A stretch of DNA of 64,000 nt from Setoptus koraiensis (lineage: Eukaryota; Animalia; Arthropoda): positions 7,192,001 to 7,256,000 of the forward strand of contig CM106586.1 of assembly GCA_048013815.1 (NCBI GenBank). Direction: 5' to 3'. The stretch's first letter is position 1, and each line of letters starts with the position of its first letter. The notes under the pieces are model-generated. The model was given only the letters and a program-made list of their open reading frames with translations. It was not told the DNA's origin and ran no database searches. Made by a program: the position numbers and the translations under genes. Shown here in pieces: positions 38,501-60,600 of the stretch.

Positions 38501-41500
38501 CGGGTGTACCGTGGCGCCTCCATAGCGCCATGATATGGCGCCAACACACAGGCAAACATCCAATAGCAGGTTGGCCGGGTGACGCAACTAACTATTATAA
38601 CTAACTAATATATTGTTTATCTACCTTGTTTGTTGTCTAATAAATGATTACGCAACGCAATGCATTGTTGTTGTTGTTGTTGTTCAACAGGAATCCGCCC
38701 TGGTGGCACAGGAGAACCCGAATGGAGCGCGCCCTTCTGGCTATGGTGGCCGTATTTGTATTGTTATCATTGGCTCTGGTGTCGATGTTGACTACCTTCA
38801 GCTTGATTCCATGTAAGTACAATGCTCATTGATTGTCGCCCGCTGTCACCTGAGCAGCTTGTTGCCGTGAGTTGCGTCGTGCGTTATGCGGCTGCGAGTT
38901 ATGACTTTGAGTTATAGCTGCGAGTTACTACTGTGAGCCATGACTGCGAGTCTCGTTACGTAAGCTATGGCAAGACAAGAGATAGCGAAGCAGAACAGAA
39001 CAGCCAGCGAAAGCGGATAAGTTGAGCCCGAGTGACGAGGCCATGCGAGTTATATGACTTAATTGGCCAGTTTAAACAGAAGAGAACTGTTGTTGTTGTT
39101 GCCGGCGTAGCTGTAGTAGTGGCTGTTATGTAATGGTTGTCGGCGGCACAATGCAAGCCGACAGGAAAGTTGCCACTTAAAGACTGTCGCTCAAGATCCG
39201 CTCTCTCGGCGACTCTCAGCGACTCTCAAGCGATCGATGCCGGCTGTCTTGTGACAGACCCAAACCGAGCACAAAAATGTGTCGTAGCAAACAACAATGG
39301 GCAACCTTGATGACACCGGGCGATCGTTTATTTATTTCAATACTCTCGAATTGTAGATGGAAATAGATGAAAAATCTGGCGAAAATTTAAAAATCTAGCC
39401 TGCGATGGCTTCAGTTCAGCCAGCGACAGTGCAAGTGGCAACAGGATTGAGCTGTCATTGCGCACAAACGTAGCGATGATGAGAGGCTCAAATTAGGGGC
39501 GCATCGTCGATATCAGCAGCCTGCAATGGCCACAATCGCGAACCGTTCGGCGACCATGTTCAAATTAATCAATGGGCGCCGGCCCCACAACAATGTTGCG
39601 CCATCATTAGTGCTAATCAGTGTTTTGTTTGCATCATCGTTTTCATTTTATTCACTATCAATCAACTGCCACCCATCGGCGCATTTTTCATCGCAACCGC
39701 AACCGCAACTGCAACTGCAACTGCACCGCGCATCTCGCCCCAATTCATCGCAATCTGCAAACCATCACAAACTGTCACCATCGACGGTTGCGTCACGTCA
39801 AACTGCCGGCCGCCACCAACCGACCGCGCGCAATGGCACAAATAAAAAAATCACGTCAAACGCGCGTCATGACTACGACGACAACGACAACGACGATGAC
39901 CAATCGCTCAACGACAATTTGCCCGCCTACGTTGAATATCACACGGAATCGGCCAATGGGCACCACCAACAAATGATTGCGCTTGTCGCCGACGGCGAGA
40001 CAGACTTCAAGGCGTCCCTGCTGAACCCGTCCATAGGGGCCATCGCTCCCGTCGCGCAACACTCCACGGCCCCGCAAATACCCGGCACGGATGAGGGCGT
40101 TTCGAGGCGCGCCAAGGCGCTACGAATCTCAAACGAGCTGCTGGAGGAGCGGCCCGCGGCGAAGAAGCGGCCCGAACAGGACGACGTTTGCACGACGCCT
40201 GGCTGCGTCATAGCGGGTGAGTTCACCAATATTATTCTTAGCAAGCGAAATCTAGCGAGATTCTAGCTGGCATTTTGGCTGGATTTTACCTGTGTTGCTA
40301 GTGCTTGTGGTCAATTGACTAATCAACTGTCGACTCTCGTATACAGCCGCCGAAATACTGAAGAGCATGGACGAAAAAGTGGACCCGTGCGAAGACTTTT
40401 ACCAGGTGAGTTTTCGAGATTCTCGTCACGATGTGACACATGATAAATATATAATTAATAATGAACATGATGCACAACAACCTCATTTGTTTGCCTCACC
40501 TGTCGCGTGCGCAGTACGCGTGCGGTAACTGGATCGAGTCGCAAGTGATACCAGAGGACAGAACGTCGGTGTCGCTATTTTCAATTGTCACCGATGAATT
40601 GGACAATAAATTGCGCAACCTCATCGAGAAGGAGCCGAGCAACATTGACGCTCCCATTGTGGGCAAGATGCGCGCCCTCTATAAGAGCTGCACCAACATA
40701 AGTGAGTGCAAACCAATACCGACCGGCGACGCCGGTTCGACCAATTAACTGACCAACTGATTAACTGACCAACTGATTATCTGACCAGCTGATTAAGTAA
40801 CAAAAAAAATGTGTCTGACATCATCTGTCGCAATTGTTTGTCGGGGGCCATATGGACGACAGCCGATATCGAGAACCGCGGCAACGAGCCCCTGATGGAC
40901 GTCATCAACGCCATGGGCGGCTGGCCCGTCCTGGGCGACAAGAACAAGGTGAAAAGGTGGACCAACGTAACAAGCAATTACCCCGATTATTGGCTAGAGT
41001 TATTGGGCTTACTGAGAAAGCATGGCTTCAGTCATGATATACTCATTGATCTGAGTGTCACGCCGGATTTCCGCAACAACACCAAGCACATCATAGACGT
41101 AAGTTGTTGAAACAGAAGCGCAATTTGCGCCTACCCATCAGCCGGCCGGTCAATCAATTAGCATATTGCAGAGACTTGCTTGCTGTAATGAATTGATAAT
41201 TGATTCTGAACGAATTATAATTCTCTTGATCGACTCACTACTGACCAAAATAATTTGCCTCTCTATTGCGTAGGTGGACCAAGCCTCATTGGGAATGCCT
41301 GACAGGAGCTACTTGCTTAAAGGTGAGCGACGCGCCACATTTGGTCTAGTCCAGGTGTGGGCACCCTGTTGATTGTTTGTTCAGTGCAACTAGTGTAACT
41401 ATTATGTAACTTGTATCCACGACGCTCGCTCGGTTCGGTGTGATGCTAATCAAATGATCGCTCTCTGTCTGTCCAACTCAAATTACTATCAGGCATCAAT

Positions 41501-57600: not shown

Positions 57601-60600
57601 GTTGAGAAACAACTTGTTGCTGTAGGAGCGGCCCTCGGTGTTGTAGGCCAGGCACTGGTAGTGGCCCCGGTGGTGGAGCTTTATGTTCTGAATGACCAAC
57701 GATTGGTTGCTTATCACGATGCCCTGGCTTGAGTCGGCCAACAGGGGACTGTCCTCGAACAGCCAGGTAATGTCAGACACGTAGGGATTTGCAACAATGT
57801 TGCAATCAAAGAAGACGTCGCTGCCCAGTTTAATGGAGTCGCCATTTATGTTTGCGCCGAATTGAAGGGACAGCTGAGCGGCGTCTACAGGCAGAGGATA
57901 AACGACAACAACAAATGAACGGATAAATTTTTAAATAAATGAATGAACAATGGATAAACGAAATGGGCAGTCAGCATCTGACGACGAGCATCATGTAAAA
58001 TGTTGCTGCAAAATGTAATGGTGAGAATGGTCATTCAATGGCGACAATTTAATGTTGACTTACAGTGAACGTCCATCACGAATGAGTCACTTATGGGGCC
58101 CAAGTTTGGCATTTGTAGGTTTCGGGCGGCACAGGTGAACTGTTGCCCGTTATCACGAATGGTTGGCACGTAGGTGAGATGACTGGTGACATTGTCGCGC
58201 GATATGGTCTCTATTATGCTAATTGCCTTGTCGTCTAGCGACGAGTGCGACCTATGCGACTGTGTCTCGTCCACTAGCTCCTCTTTGTTTCTGAACCAGC
58301 TTATTTTGGGCGACGGCCTAGACCCGAACACGTGGCACACAATGTCGTAGCGGACATCCGCCCGAAAGAAGCCGCCCTTGGGCAGGGCAGCGATCTTGAC
58401 TTGTGTGGGCCTCACTAACGGTGGGCGACGTTGAATAAAGCGGACAATAAAGTTAAAATTAGCAAGTTAGTTAATTAGTAGTTAGTTAACAGCAAGTTAA
58501 TATAATTAATTAGTCAGTAATCATTGAGCGATATATGCAAATTGGTAGTTAGCGACTCACAGTTGAGATTGAGACTTATGGAAACGTTCAGTGGGGCACT
58601 TAACAGGTTGTTGCTCGATGTGCACATAAACTCGGCCGACTGGTCATTGCGAGACACATTGATGTGTAATATGTTTTGTATTCTGTTGCCTATCACTAGT
58701 GTCTGCTGCGAATGATCAATCAATTTGGTCCATTGTTTCACCATGCCCATCGTGTGAGCATCTCGGCTGCTGGCAACGAGCCGATTGTGGTCGCCGTAAG
58801 TGGTTATATATTGATTATCACTACTGTTGTTGTTGTTGTTGTTGCTGTTGTGGCTTATTAAATTGTCGTGGCCGGCCGCGTATGCCGGCGACAAGTGGCG
58901 CTGGCCCTGACTCTGGTGATTGGCCTGATCGGACAGCGTTTTCCAGCCAGATTTTGTCCATTGTCTATGCTTGGAATTGGTCAGTTGGTGCTGTTGTTGT
59001 TGCTGTTGCTGATGATGGCGATCATTGTTGATGTTGTTGTTGTTGTTGTTGATAGACGACAGGCGCCACCAGTAGACACTTGTTTCCGGCTTGCCCAAGT
59101 CCGATTCACAGGTGAACCTGAGCGAGGATCCCTCGTCGTAGGGTCCGATTTGGCCAGAGACGCTGTGGCCCAGTTGGTCGGTCACCAGTAACTTGGAGGG
59201 GGGCGCTGAATGAAGTTTGGCGTGCATGAAATGGTAAATAAAAGTTAAATAAGAGCAGCGATTCATATGTGAATAACAACAATCAACAGCAAGTATGCAA
59301 CACAAATAACAAAAGAGTATTAACAAAGTAGAAGTGCAATCAAAAGTATCCACGAACGAGCACGAATTCATGAATACTTATCATTGCTGGACTTACTTAT
59401 GAGCTGCAGCTTGACCTTGTAGATTTGCGTGGGCGCCTTCTTGAAGTCCACCCGACACCTATAGAGGCCCTGATCGGCGCCCTCCACGGATCGGATAATC
59501 AGCGAAGGCACTTGTTGGCTGACATCGAAATAGAGACGGTTTTCATCACTGGCCGGCAGGGCGCGCTCATTGGGTTCATCGGGTCCATTGGGTCCGTCGC
59601 GTCCGTCGGGCTCATTGAGTGGCTCCAATGCGGGCTGCTGGTGGCTGAAGGGGCCCAGCGCCAACTCGCTGCCAATCTGGTGCCGGGCCTTGCTCAGAGA
59701 GGGCACCTGACGCGCGTCCAGCGTATAAATGGGCGAGTTTATTGTGTTGCTGAGCTCATTGTTTTTGTACCACAATACAATGGTCACCCCCATCTGGTTT
59801 GTTTGGGTTGTCTGGTGCTGATTGGGCTGGGCCCATTTGCTTATGTTGCATGGAATAGCTATCGATTGACCGGGCAGGGCCTCAATGGTGGCCGCGTCCG
59901 CAATTGACTGGTCGGCGTGACTAGAGTCGCCTGGTGGGGCCAAGTCAAACTGGCCGCCCGCCATAGATAACAATTGCGACGGTTCGGGTAACAGAGGGGG
60001 CGCTGGCTGGACGACGGGCGATTGTGTCATGTTGTGGGTGTCTATTGTGGGTGCATTATCGTGTGAGGTGAGATTCGATGATGAGATCGACGGACGCAAA
60101 ATTGGAATTGCCGGCTGGTTGGCGCTGGCCCACATTTCGGGGGGCGCATTTTCCGCTGTTGGCGCTCGGGTTGCCGGCCGGGTGGCCGCTCTGGTTGCCG
60201 CCGAGGCTGCGAGCTGCTGTGATGTATTGCCGCTGACGTCGTGGGCCGTCGTCGGTGATGGTGGGCCCGTCCGAGCTGGATAAGACAGTGAGAGGGGGCG
60301 GGGCAAGAGTGAGCGGGTAGGGCGAGCGGGGGGGGATAAAAGAATGATGAGAGAATTGTTGCGCGTTGGTGTCGATCATTATTGTTCATTATTGTGCCGG
60401 CGCCGCGGCACAGCAGTCAGCTAATAATCTTGTGTGAGCGGCTCACAAGTCGTGAGAATTGCGCGGCGCCGAACGTTGTTTCAACGCTGAACAGTTTCAA
60501 AAAAACATTTCAGGGGCCCCTTTGGCGTTTTGTTGGCCGCCTATGCGCGCCCGCTCGTGGCAAAGTGACAACTGGCGCCAAGTGGCGCATGCACGCCAGC

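What the first reader, a model, noticed from the sequence alone, without database searches (positions are those of the whole stretch)
38570..60420. Many introns have long AG-exclusion zones with distant YTRAY branch-site motifs
Seen, AG-free lengths before the acceptor on the coding strand. Neprilysin: 38570-38688 (~119 nt), 41728-41905 (178 nt, beginning exactly at caG-CTAAC), 42343-42526 (184 nt, CTGAC 126 nt upstream). Sidestep: 56701-56562 (140 nt, CTAAC 125 nt upstream), 59376-59208 (169 nt), 60420-60278 (143 nt, beginning at AG-CTGAC), and almost all of intron 58560-58415, which is packed with CTAAC/CTAAT. Several acceptors have almost no polypyrimidine tract (tatggacgacAG, gaatgatgcAG, aacgcgcgcgccAG). 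Intron 40702-40862 carries tandem AACTGAC/AACTGAT copies. Known: animal branch points usually lie ~18-40 nt from the AG; distant ones with scanning to the first AG are exceptions (for example PTBP1 exon 11, alpha-tropomyosin). Inference: this lineage may define 3' splice sites mainly by branch site plus AG scanning, with reduced reliance on the U2AF pyrimidine tract.
Basis: partly seen in the sequence, partly recalled or inferred. Interest (0 to 1): 0.75.

Follow-up and report, generated by a model that had tools for sequence, protein, structure and literature searches.

The report
Long AG-free intron ends, gall mite
In this intron-poor gall-mite genome, most introns of two genes end with roughly 90-380 bases containing no usable AG and have no pyrimidine tract at the acceptor, which suggests the cell marks the intron at an upstream branch site and cuts at the first good AG, a yeast-like layout not described for an animal lineage.

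Summary
All seven AG-free stretches are exactly as described. Spliced contigs of public run X4 confirm ten neprilysin introns to the base. Relatives in four other public samples confirm the neprilysin and sidestep junctions.

For 15 window introns the median AG-free zone before the acceptor is 97 nt, or 119 nt if GAG is ignored. Dinucleotide-preserving shuffles of 13 of them give about 40 nt, and 0 of 1000 reach the observed value. Only 1.7% of all AGs in the window have a zone of 90 nt or more (P about 5e-15). AG density upstream of the zone is normal (0.051), so composition is not the cause.

The acceptor has no pyrimidine tract. CTAAC is the most enriched 5-mer, and pyrimidines are enriched just downstream of it.

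U2 snRNA, SF1, U2AF35, U2AF65, SLU7 and PRP18 are all present. U2AF65 keeps conserved RRMs but lacks its RS domain in every eriophyoid homologue.

Best reading: the 3' splice site is anchored at the branch site, and the first non-GAG AG downstream is used. Branch points are unmapped, and many candidate motifs lie only 25-65 nt away. I could not test genome-wide generality. The scan noted the same pattern at other loci of this genome. I found no paper describing it.

The parts
29642..38690 (+). Neprilysin coding intron of 9049 nt (GTGAGT...CAG). Its last 119 nt (38570-38688) are AG-free. CTAAC at 38588 and 38601; CTAAT at 38605 and 38637.
   Evidence: X4 spliced contig record 25 joins letters matching window 29612-29641 to 38691 onward. 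The frame stays open across the junction. AG-free zone.
38813..40003 (+). Neprilysin intron of 1191 nt. The AG-free run 39621-39997 (377 nt) ends in a GAG that is bypassed; the CAG at 40001-40003 is used. CTAAT at 39613-39617 sits 4 nt before the run starts (candidate branch site 387 nt upstream).
   Evidence: Joint 38812>40004 with GT..AG ends in X4. The relative L024 has 319 AG-free nt before the orthologous CAG. Motif coordinates.
39622..40002 (+). Open reading frame inside the intron above, with no AG except the final GAG. Its 3' part is conserved at protein level in the relative, mostly through synonymous changes. Probably exonic in an alternative isoform.
   Evidence: All K/Q/S/R codons and all but the final E codon avoid AG (P about 1e-9 given this genome's codon usage). 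About 25 AGs would be expected at coding density.
40217..40346 (+). Neprilysin intron 1 of the eight numbered in the report (nep1-nep8, after the two introns above), 130 nt, AG-free zone 43 nt; CTAAT 24 nt from the 3' end.
   Evidence: X4 joint; orthologous intron in L024; table.
40406..40514 (+). Neprilysin intron 2, 109 nt, AG-free zone 94 nt; no CTRAY motif.
   Evidence: X4 joint; this intron is absent in L025, L027 and L028, whose exons abut exactly.
40702..40862 (+). Neprilysin intron 3, 161 nt, AG-free zone 63 nt; tandem CTGAC/CTGAT copies; purine-rich acceptor (GGACGACAG).
   Evidence: X4 joint.
41099..41273 (+). Neprilysin intron 4, 175 nt, AG-free zone 98 nt; CTGAC 29 nt from the 3' end.
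   Evidence: X4 joint; orthologous introns in L024, L025 and L027.
41323..41492 (+). Neprilysin intron 5, 170 nt, AG-free zone 97 nt; CTAAT 43 nt from the 3' end.
   Evidence: X4 joint.
41624..41907 (+). Neprilysin intron 6, 284 nt, AG-free zone 178 nt (41728-41905) that starts exactly at CTAAC (41728-41732). An 18-nt block at 41774-41791 is identical in the relative.
   Evidence: X4 joint. Alignment with L024, where a CTAAT lies at the aligned position and the zone is 212 nt.
41995..42141 (+). Neprilysin intron 7, 147 nt (GTAACT donor). A GAG lies 22 nt before the acceptor; the zone free of non-GAG AG is 86 nt; CTGAC 61 nt from the 3' end.
   Evidence: X4 joint.
42338..42528 (+). Neprilysin intron 8, 191 nt. 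AG-free for 184 nt, i.e. the whole intron after the donor. CTGAC at 42399-42403 (126 nt from the 3' end). Acceptor AATGATGCAG.
   Evidence: X4 joint. This intron is absent in L025, L027, L028 and L029, whose exons abut.
59206..59396 (-). Sidestep intron 1, 191 nt, AG-free zone 169 nt (59376-59208); no CTRAY motif.
   Evidence: Open frame across the junction; one Ig domain per exon; GT..AG at the predicted position in the relative L055.
58415..58560 (-). Sidestep intron 2, 146 nt, AG-free for 139 nt, with seven CTAAC/CTAAT/CTGAC copies.
57885..58063 (-). Sidestep intron 3, 179 nt, AG-free zone 91 nt. CTGAC (57974-57970) starts 3 nt after the last upstream AG and is followed by a T-rich tract.
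57383..57593 (-). Sidestep intron 4, 211 nt. The in-frame CAG acceptor lies 5 nt after a GAG that ends a 164-nt AG-free run (57553-57390).
   Evidence: Only the second AG keeps the frame and the Ig-domain sequence. The relative has 127 AG-free nt and no GAG.
56560..56812 (-). Sidestep intron 5, 253 nt, AG-free zone 140 nt (56701-56562). CTAAC at 56688-56684 (125 nt from the 3' end). Acceptor GCGCGCGCCAG.
60278..60420 (-). AG-free 143 nt starting at CTGAC, before a putative first sidestep acceptor (60277/60276). Unverified.
   Evidence: AG-free stretch confirmed. No donor, RNA or clear orthologous junction found. L055 has a similar 101-nt AG-free stretch before a CAG, but homology is unclear.

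Best explanation
These are genuine U2-type (GT-AG) introns of an intron-poor eriophyoid mite. Their 3' end appears to be specified in two separate steps.

Step 1 (inferred). SF1, U2AF and then U2 snRNP bind a CTAAC-like branch site and a modest pyrimidine-rich stretch just downstream of it. This site lies at a variable and often long distance from the exon: candidate motifs are 12-176 nt away (median about 55), and 387 nt away in one case.

Step 2 (inferred from sequence, with one RNA-supported case). After lariat formation, the first acceptable AG downstream of the branch is used. CAG and TAG dominate, and GAG is passed over.

Because the AG itself has no adjacent pyrimidine tract, any YAG arising between branch site and exon would be used wrongly. 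Purifying selection therefore keeps this interval AG-free, even where the interval is an open reading frame.

Loss of the U2AF65 RS domain in eriophyoids, together with strong GTRAGT donors and CTAAC-like motifs, fits the known drift of intron-poor lineages towards strong, self-sufficient signals.

Shown: the introns, the AG-free zones and their conservation, the absence of an acceptor-proximal pyrimidine tract, motif enrichment, presence of the factors, and loss of the RS domain. Inferred: which adenosine branches, that scanning is the mechanism, and any causal link to the RS-domain loss.
For: - Introns are proven. Ten neprilysin junctions are seen as GT..AG joints in X4 contigs that are identical to the window. 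No retrocopy exists in the genome: the only 100% match is the window itself.
- Pfam M13_N profile positions run on seamlessly from exon to exon.
- Relatives either keep each intron at exactly the predicted base or lack it, with the exons abutting.
- AG-free zones: window median 97 nt, or 119 nt without GAG. Shuffles never reach this. P about 5e-15 against all AGs of the window.
- AG is the most depleted dinucleotide on the sense strand (observed/expected 0.41, against CT 0.83 and GA 1.06). The depletion is confined to the 3' part; density upstream is 0.051.
- Relatives keep zones of median 70 nt (87 nt without GAG), although their introns align at only 44-62% identity.
- A 377-nt AG-free ORF lies inside an RNA-proven intron and is matched by 319 AG-free nt in the relative.
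- CTAAC occurs in 14 of 32 introns against 4.7 expected (z 4.8), and CTRAY in 29 of 32.
- For 15 of 20 CTAAC copies the first AG at least 8 nt downstream is the acceptor (null 0.53).
- Pyrimidines are enriched after the motif but not before the AG.
- U2 snRNA carries GUAGUA. SF1, U2AF35, U2AF65, SLU7 and PRP18 are present.
- U2AF65 lacks the RS domain in every eriophyoid homologue listed, including a UniRef Aceria tosichella entry. The domain is 50-95 aa long in ticks, Sarcoptes, Dinothrombium, Drosophila and a horseshoe crab.
- Scanning from the branch site and AG-free zones as markers of distal branch points are established in vertebrates (PMC1431707, PMC5378181).
Against: - No branch point is mapped.
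- In about half of the introns a CTRAY motif also lies within 24-65 nt of the AG, so the branch may be only moderately distant while the AG-free zone is longer than scanning alone requires (for example nep4: motif at 29 nt, zone 98 nt).
- Four window introns (nep2, nep7, side1, side4) have no CTRAY motif that passes the first-AG test; nep2 and side1 have none at all.
- The motif is not significantly concentrated at the 5' edge of the zone (13 against 9.4 expected, P = 0.07).
- The CTAAC first-AG test is only modestly above its null (0.75 against 0.53).
- GG also shows a lengthened exclusion zone (62 nt, 2.3 times expectation), which I cannot explain.
- The window for the pyrimidine test was chosen after seeing the data.
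- The sample is two genes plus their orthologues. An annotation-free test on 275 kb from elsewhere in the genome showed no CTAAC signal (rank 9 of 30), probably because that sample holds few introns.
- Redundancy of the two U2AF RS domains in Drosophila (Rudner 1998, as cited in PMC12956353) means the RS loss may have little consequence.
Confidence: 0.62

Rival explanations
1. Proximal but degenerate branch points. Branches form at the usual 18-40 nt using weak motifs. Acceptors lack a pyrimidine tract and the introns are full of CTRAY-like decoys, so any upstream YAG could pair with a decoy branch site and be mis-spliced. Selection therefore removes AGs over a wide zone without any distal branch point being used.
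For: Many introns have a CTRAY or TTAAC-like motif 24-65 nt from the AG. The AG-free zone often extends 45-70 nt beyond the most upstream competent motif. The link between motif and zone edge is weak (P = 0.07).
Against: In nep6, nep8, side3, side5 and the relatives' introns L024_i6, L026_i6 and L028_i6, the only CTRAY motifs in the zone lie 86-176 nt upstream. In the 1191-nt intron the only CTRAY at the zone lies 387 nt upstream, and the zone is a constrained ORF. Pyrimidine enrichment follows the upstream motif rather than preceding the AG.
Confidence: 0.25
2. Composition or mutation bias. The introns are simply AG-poor (or G-poor) on the sense strand, and the long zones are a by-product.
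For: AG-free runs of 100 nt or more are common in this patchy window. GG is also depleted near acceptors. Intron G content is low (0.17).
Against: Shuffles that keep each intron's own dinucleotide counts never reach the observed zones (0 of 1000). AG density in the 5' parts is normal (0.051). The reverse-complement dinucleotide CT is not depleted. The zone persists in sequence-saturated orthologous introns and inside an ORF through synonymous codon choice.
Confidence: 0.03
3. The AG-free zones mark regulated alternative splicing, as with vertebrate distal-branch-point exons where repressors bind between branch and exon. They would be a property of these particular genes, not a default mode of the lineage.
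For: In humans long AG-free zones are enriched at alternatively spliced exons (PMC1431707). The 38813-40003 intron contains a conserved ORF that suggests an alternative upstream acceptor.
Against: The zones occur at nearly every intron of two unrelated genes, including constitutive domain-encoding exons, and in all relatives examined. Earlier notes of this scan report the same at other loci (unverified). In humans only 1.2% of introns reach 100 nt (PMC1431707), against 6 of 15 here.
Confidence: 0.1

Closest known systems
Vertebrate distal-branch-point introns with AG exclusion zones (alpha-tropomyosin exon 3, PTBP1 exon 11, GABBR1 exon 23; Gooding et al. 2006, PMC1431707; Taggart et al. 2017, PMC5378181)
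   Same: Long AG-free zone before the acceptor. A consensus-like branch motif lies towards the 5' end of the zone in several introns. Pyrimidines are adjacent to the branch motif rather than to the AG. The first AG downstream is used. The zone is conserved between species while the sequence is not.
   Different: In humans this is a rare class (838 of 67,334 introns reach 100 nt) tied to regulated exons. Here 6 of 15 introns (10 of 15 if GAG is ignored) reach 100 nt in ordinary short introns of two genes. The pyrimidine tract is weak, and no branch point has been mapped.
Saccharomyces cerevisiae intron architecture (strong GUAUGU donor, UACUAAC branch site, variable branch-to-AG distance, no pyrimidine-tract requirement, RS-less Mud2)
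   Same: An intron-poor genome. Near-invariant donor (GTRAGT in 26 of 32). A branch-site motif complementary to U2 GUAGUA is the top enriched word. No acceptor-proximal pyrimidine tract. Wide spread of motif-to-AG distances. The U2AF large-subunit homologue has no RS domain.
   Different: The motif is degenerate (CTRAY; no full TACTAAC in 32 introns). U2AF35 is present with an RS/RD tail. The U2AF65 RRMs and the U2AF35-binding motif are fully conserved. Long branch-to-AG intervals show no excess secondary structure (mean z +0.47), unlike yeast introns that need structure (PMC3239191).
Convergent strong 3' intron structures in intron-poor eukaryotes (Irimia and Roy 2008, PMC2483917)
   Same: Massive intron loss goes with stronger donor and branch-site consensus and with loss of the terminal polyT tract.
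   Different: That study found short, fixed branch-to-AG distances in several intron-poor protists and yeasts, and polyT motifs concentrated near the intron's 3' end as the pattern in metazoans. Here an animal shows the intron-poor syndrome with long, variable distances.
Canonical arthropod/metazoan 3' splice site (branch point 10-60 nt upstream, pyrimidine tract abutting YAG, bound by the U2AF heterodimer)
   Same: GT-AG boundaries, YAG acceptor (C 22, T 9, A 1 at position -3), and a full set of U2AF, SF1 and U2 components.
   Different: No pyrimidine enrichment in the last 22 nt (0.56 against 0.55). A purine is preferred at position -4 (25 of 32). The AG-free zone is several times longer.

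Membership tests
U2-type (major) spliceosomal introns | GT...AG boundaries removed precisely from mRNA | tested here: met
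   Nine GT..AG joints, plus a tenth junction inferred from a loose end, in spliced X4 contigs. Open frames across all junctions. Donors GTGAGT or GTAAGT in 26 of 32 introns.
U2-type (major) spliceosomal introns | Machinery present: U2 snRNA with GUAGUA, SF1, U2AF large and small subunits | tested here: met
   RF00004, two copies at 116 and 115 bits, with GUGUAGUA. SF1-HH at 144 bits. U2AF35 matches PDB 4yh8 (1.7e-46) and 1jmt (1.7e-36). TIGR01642 at 369 bits, over the cut-off.
Canonical metazoan 3' splice site | Polypyrimidine tract immediately upstream of the acceptor AG | tested here: not met
   Y fraction is 0.52 at positions -3 to -12 and 0.56 over the last 22 nt, against an intron mean of 0.55; P = 0.27.
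Canonical metazoan 3' splice site | Branch point about 18-40 nt (human range 10-60 nt) from the AG | not testable with these tools
   No raw RNA reads for lariat mapping. Motif positions are ambiguous: competent CTRAY motifs lie 12-176 nt away, median about 56.
Distal-branch-point / AG-scanning introns | AG exclusion zone of 100 nt or more before the acceptor | tested here: met
   6 of 15 window introns, or 10 of 15 ignoring GAG; 5 of 24 in relatives, or 8 of 24 ignoring GAG. The human frequency is 1.2% (PMC1431707).
Distal-branch-point / AG-scanning introns | Consensus branch motif near the 5' end of the zone with an adjacent pyrimidine tract | tested here: inconclusive
   Clear in nep6, side2, side3, side5, the 1191-nt intron and several relatives' introns. 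Overall position test P = 0.07. Pyrimidine enrichment after the motif P about 0.001, with a window chosen post hoc.
Distal-branch-point / AG-scanning introns | Experimentally mapped distal branch; an inserted AG is used or harms splicing | not testable with these tools
   Needs lariat sequencing or minigenes.
Yeast-type intron architecture | Near-invariant UACUAAC branch site | tested here: not met
   TACTAAC in 0 of 32 introns, ACTAAC in 7 of 32, CTAAC in 14 of 32, CTRAY in 29 of 32.
Yeast-type intron architecture | No U2AF small subunit; large-subunit homologue without RS domain | tested here: inconclusive
   U2AF35 is present, so that part is not met. The RS domain is absent from U2AF65 in the window species and in all eriophyoid homologues seen, so that part is met.
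Yeast-type intron architecture | Long branch-to-AG intervals shortened by RNA structure | tested here: not met
   For 17 AG-free zones of 80 nt or more, the mean z-score of folding energy against dinucleotide shuffles is +0.47.

The most novel reading that the evidence does not exclude
Eriophyoid mites as a lineage have shifted the default mode of 3' splice-site definition to a branch-site-anchored, first-YAG (scanning) mode. The pyrimidine tract has moved to the branch site and U2AF65 has lost its RS domain. This would be the first animal clade with a yeast-like 3' intron architecture. The resulting ban on AG is strong enough to shape the codon usage of reading frames that double as intron, such as the 377-nt AG-free ORF at 39622-40002.
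Probability: 0.45. Interest if true: 0.82.

Novelty: new variant of a known kind. Interest (0 to 1): 0.72.

Why it matters
If general, this gives a metazoan counterpart to the strong-signal syndrome of intron-poor yeasts and protists. That syndrome has so far been studied only across very distant unicellular lineages. Here, close outgroups (spider mites, other acariform mites) still have conventional introns and a U2AF65 RS domain. That makes an old question directly testable: do splice signals change because weak introns are lost, or because the machinery co-evolves?

It also has practical weight. Gene finders trained on pyrimidine-tract acceptors will mis-call exon starts in these pest genomes. 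In this window a conserved 246-codon ORF would be taken for an exon, although RNA shows that most of it is spliced out.

AG-free zones can also serve as a simple annotation aid and as a marker of selection on non-coding and dual-use sequence.

Tried and rejected
1. Annotation-free count of dinucleotide-free runs in the window. AG-free runs of 100 nt or more (42) are no more numerous than CC-, GG- or TA-free runs, so this statistic is not informative on its own.

2. Home-made ab initio intron finder (codon-usage model plus GTRAG donors plus frame continuity) on the window and 200 kb of genome sample. It gave too many false calls inside long ORFs and skipped short exons. I abandoned it and used none of its calls.

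About eleven M13 paralogues were located but could not be read, so no genome-wide distribution was obtained.

4. Test of whether CTAAC, compared with its 29 letter permutations, is more often followed by 80 nt or more without AG. It ranks 1st of 30 in the window but 9th of 30 in 275 kb from elsewhere. That gives no independent genome-wide signal, probably because that sample holds few introns.

5. Structure hypothesis (a yeast-like hairpin shortening long branch-to-AG distances). Rejected: mean z +0.47.

6. Dinothrombium orthologue as outgroup. Its introns are mostly 55-61 nt, so the zones are capped by intron length, and my boundaries there are less certain. Only one of its seven introns has a CTRAY motif. 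It is a weak comparator.

7. My first model of exon 39622-40216, based on an open frame and similarity to the relative, was wrong in part. RNA contigs show the acceptor at 40003.

8. The L050 and L051 candidates for U2AF65 turned out to look like PUF60 and an SR protein, by my reading of the ORFs. The true U2AF65 was found with TIGR01642.

9. The look-up of sequencing runs listed no run on record as RNA, yet the contigs of X4 are spliced.

Exons were searched one by one by reference. Joined translations were made only inside local scripts to check reading frames.

Full report
**What the window is.** The 64-kb window is G000:C2:7192001-7256000 of a 48.8-Mb, two-contig genome. Earlier notes of this scan call it an intron-poor eriophyoid (gall) mite. 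That fits what I saw. Many genes are single long ORFs (for example 2464, 975 and 831 aa). The best named homologues of its U2AF large subunit are from the eriophyoids Aceria tosichella and Fragariocoptes setiger.

**Check of the observation.** The motif positions quoted are correct.

**Are these introns real?** I built frame-consistent models for both genes.
- For neprilysin, the Pfam Peptidase_M13_N profile is matched by successive exons at positions 8-69, 73-132, 157-195, 198-223, 225-277 and 282-381. The 16-aa exon that would fill 133-156 was too short to scan.
- Sidestep has one Ig domain per exon, followed by an fn3 domain.
- Relatives from four other public samples (72-91% identical in the last neprilysin exon) either carry an intron with GT..AG at exactly the base predicted by coordinate arithmetic, or lack that intron with the two exons abutting. 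All five sidestep introns are likewise conserved in position in one relative.
- The look-up of sequencing runs listed no RNA run. Even so, laying run X4 on 38400-43700 showed contigs identical to the window that skip nine intervals with GT..AG ends. These are my eight introns to the base plus 38813-40003. One contig's upstream 141 letters match window 29612-29641, which is followed by GTGAGT.
- The genome has no second copy of this gene that could be a retrocopy. The only 100% match is the window; the next best is 72%.
- The frame is open from an ATG at 29568 through both new junctions.
- The acceptor at 60277/60276 remains unverified.

**How unusual are the zones?** For the 15 window introns the AG-free zones are 119, 2, 43, 94, 63, 98, 97, 178, 22, 184, 169, 139, 91, 3 and 140 nt, with a median of 97.
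- Only 1.7% of all 6563 AGs in the window follow 90 nt or more without AG, against 10 of 15 acceptors (P about 5e-15).
- For the 13 introns first defined, shuffling each intron's interior gives a median of 15 nt when mononucleotides are kept and 40 nt when dinucleotides are kept. None of 1000 shuffles reaches 97. The 19 orthologous neprilysin introns behave the same way: observed 68 nt against 15 and 23 nt.
- AG is the most depleted sense-strand dinucleotide (observed/expected 0.41). CT, its complement, is at 0.83 and GA at 1.06.
- Upstream of the zone the AG density is 182 in 3544 nt, or 0.051, which equals the window average. Density rises from 0.005 in the last 40 nt to about 0.065 beyond 200 nt.
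- Among all 16 dinucleotides only AG (86 nt, 3.6 times expectation) and, unexplained, GG (62 nt, 2.3 times) have lengthened exclusion zones.
- In humans 838 of 67,334 introns (1.2%) reach 100 nt (PMC1431707). Here 6 of 15 do.

**Conservation.** The closest relative's introns align with the window's at only 44-62% identity, close to saturation. Even so, the AG-free zones persist: 43, 4 (GAG), 73, 87, 68, 212, 95 and 99 nt for neprilysin, and 53, 98, 54, 127 and 127 nt for sidestep. More distant relatives also keep them. For example, one 665-nt intron has 41 AGs in its first 500 nt and none in the last 165 nt.

**GAG is tolerated.**
- Six of the 39 introns have an AG within 25 nt upstream of the acceptor. 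In five of them that AG is a GAG. The sixth is a TAG 7 nt after a CTAAC branch A, probably too close to the branch to be used.
- One GAG bypass is shown by RNA. The 1191-nt intron uses the CAG at 40001-40003, 4 nt after the GAG that ends a 377-nt AG-free run.
- In sidestep intron 4, only the CAG 5 nt after such a GAG preserves the frame.
- Ignoring GAG, the window median is 119 nt, and 13 of 15 introns reach 80 nt.

**An AG-free reading frame inside an intron.**
- The 377-nt run lies in an ORF (39526-40266). The 3' part of that ORF is conserved in the relative at protein level, mostly through synonymous differences. The relative has 319 AG-free nt before the orthologous CAG.
- Given this genome's codon usage, the chance that all K, Q, S and R codons and all but the final E codon avoid AG is about 1e-9. 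About 25 AGs would be expected at coding density.
- I infer that this segment is exonic in another isoform. An in-frame TAG acceptor exists at 39608-39610.
- I also infer that the segment is kept AG-free so that the downstream acceptor can still be reached from a branch site upstream of it. A CTAAT sits at 39613-39617, 4 nt before the run begins.
I did not check it.

**Signals.**
- Donors are GTGAGT or GTAAGT in 26 of 32 introns. Position -3 is C in 22, T in 9 and A in 1. Position -4 is a purine in 25 of 32.
- There is no pyrimidine tract at the acceptor. The Y fraction is 0.52 at -3 to -12, and 0.56 over the last 22 nt against 0.55 for random positions in the same introns (P = 0.27).
- In an unbiased 5-mer screen against a first-order Markov null, the top words are CTAAC (14 of 32 introns against 4.7 expected, z 4.8), TAACT, ACTAA and GCTAA. 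Together these form the sequence complementary to U2 GUAGUA. CTRAY occurs in 29 of 32 introns, and a full TACTAAC in none.
- For 15 of 20 CTAAC copies the first AG at least 8 nt downstream is the acceptor (null 0.53). Their distances to the 3' end are 17-176 nt, median 53.
- The most upstream such motif lies within about 21 nt of the start of the zone in 13 of 23 introns, against 9.4 expected (P = 0.07). This is a trend, not proof.
- Pyrimidines are enriched 8-30 nt downstream of that motif (0.63 against 0.55, P about 0.001). I chose that window after seeing neighbouring windows, so this result is exploratory.
- AG-free zones of 80 nt or more are not unusually structured (mean z +0.47, n = 17).

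**Machinery.**
- U2 snRNA is present in two copies with the canonical GUGUAGUA.
- SF1 is present, with its helix-hairpin domain and an N-terminal SRW motif.
- U2AF35 has the ZnF-UHM-ZnF layout and a long RS/RD tail. It matches S. pombe U2AF23 at 1.7e-46.
- The U2AF large subunit scores 369 bits against TIGR01642, over the 310-bit cut-off, and is intronless.
- PUF60 (by my reading of the ORF), SLU7 and PRP18 are also present.
- U2AF65 RRM1 and RRM2 are about 70% identical to the human protein, including the flanks that contact RNA. The U2AF35-binding WDVPP motif is intact. Pyrimidine binding by U2AF is therefore very probably retained.
- The N-terminal RS domain is missing. The ORF begins 15 residues before the WDVPP motif. 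I saw no RS-coding exon in the 1.2 kb upstream, which holds what looks like a tRNA gene and the end of another gene.
- The same holds for all 14 close homologues listed whose ORFs reach the WDVPP (WDFPP in one) motif, including UniRef Aceria tosichella and NCBI Fragariocoptes setiger. Dinothrombium, Sarcoptes, two ticks, Drosophila, Folsomia and a horseshoe crab have 50-95 residues rich in RS/RD/RE. Tetranychus has a short basic 29-residue N-terminus.
- The RS domain is proposed to help U2 snRNA anneal to the branch site (Valcarcel 1996). In Drosophila it is redundant with the U2AF35 RS domain (Rudner 1998). Both are as cited in PMC12956353. Whether its loss is cause, consequence or coincidence is open.

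**Interpretation.** The best-supported reading is that 3' splice-site choice is anchored at the branch site.
- SF1, U2AF and U2 recognise a CTAAC-like site together with pyrimidines adjacent to it, at a variable and often long distance from the exon.
- The second catalytic step then takes the first non-GAG AG downstream. Selection therefore clears AG from that interval.
- This is how the rare vertebrate distal-branch-point introns work (PMC1431707; PMC5378181, where U2AF2 binding peaks at the distal branch sites). It also resembles S. cerevisiae.
- It fits the known tendency of intron-poor lineages to evolve strong signals and lose the terminal polyT tract. That study, however, reported polyT motifs near the intron's 3' end as the metazoan pattern, and found short fixed branch-to-AG distances in several intron-poor species (PMC2483917).
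- The main rival is that branches are proximal and degenerate, and that AGs are purged merely because acceptors are weakly marked. My data do not exclude this.

**Limits.**
- No branch point is mapped.
- The sample is two genes plus their orthologues.
- A genome-wide distribution could not be obtained, and an annotation-free proxy gave no signal outside the window.
- The taxonomic identity of the relatives' samples is inferred from similarity only.
- The eriophyoid genome papers I could read do not discuss branch points, pyrimidine tracts or U2AF, and a further search turned up nothing on eriophyoid splicing signals.
- The scan itself has flagged the same pattern at other loci of this genome.

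Noticed in passing
window 29642-38690: The 9-kb neprilysin coding intron spans a GC-rich region with many ORFs, including an 831-aa ORF on the opposite strand (35590-38085). Other genes appear to be nested inside this intron.
   Followed up: no
window 39526-40266 (ORF); 39622-40002 AG-free part: This ORF is largely removed as intron in the RNA contigs, yet it is open, conserved at protein level in the relative (L024 747-1063) and entirely AG-free through synonymous codon choice. It is probably an alternative-acceptor segment with dual use.
   Followed up: partly
window 41774-41791 and L024 intron 6: An 18-nt block (AATGCCATATCTGGCCAC) is identical in the window and the relative, inside otherwise saturated intron 6 and within the AG-free zone. 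It could be a regulatory or structural element, or chance.
   Followed up: no
L052 1270-3063 (- strand), G000:C2:9393990-9395582: The U2AF large subunit has a His/Asn/Ser-rich insertion of about 140 residues between the U2AF35-binding motif and RRM1, in addition to lacking the RS domain. What looks like a tRNA gene lies about 0.75 kb upstream. An 85-nt AG-free stretch before GGACAG just upstream of the ATG suggests a 5'-UTR intron.
   Followed up: partly
P0153 (Tetranychus urticae U2AF50): The spider-mite U2AF large subunit has only a 29-residue basic N-terminus instead of a full RS domain. RS-domain reduction may predate or parallel the eriophyoid loss.
   Followed up: no
32 introns pooled: GG shows an exclusion zone before acceptors of 62 nt (2.3 times expectation), and position -4 is a purine in 25 of 32 acceptors (RYAG). 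Neither is explained by the scanning model.
   Followed up: no
window 35345-35145 (- strand) and 24069-24217 (+ strand): AG-free runs of 201 and 149 nt carry CTGAC at regular 33-nt and roughly 10-nt spacing. These are tandem repeats of unknown role outside the two genes studied.
   Followed up: no
L024-L029 (relatives' neprilysin loci): Intron presence varies strongly between relatives and paralogues, from all eight introns to none from exon 4 on, always by exact excision. Intron loss seems to be ongoing within the group.
   Followed up: partly
G000: At least ten further M13 peptidase (neprilysin-like) loci exist in the genome, most with the C-terminal 350-370 residues in one open frame.
   Followed up: no
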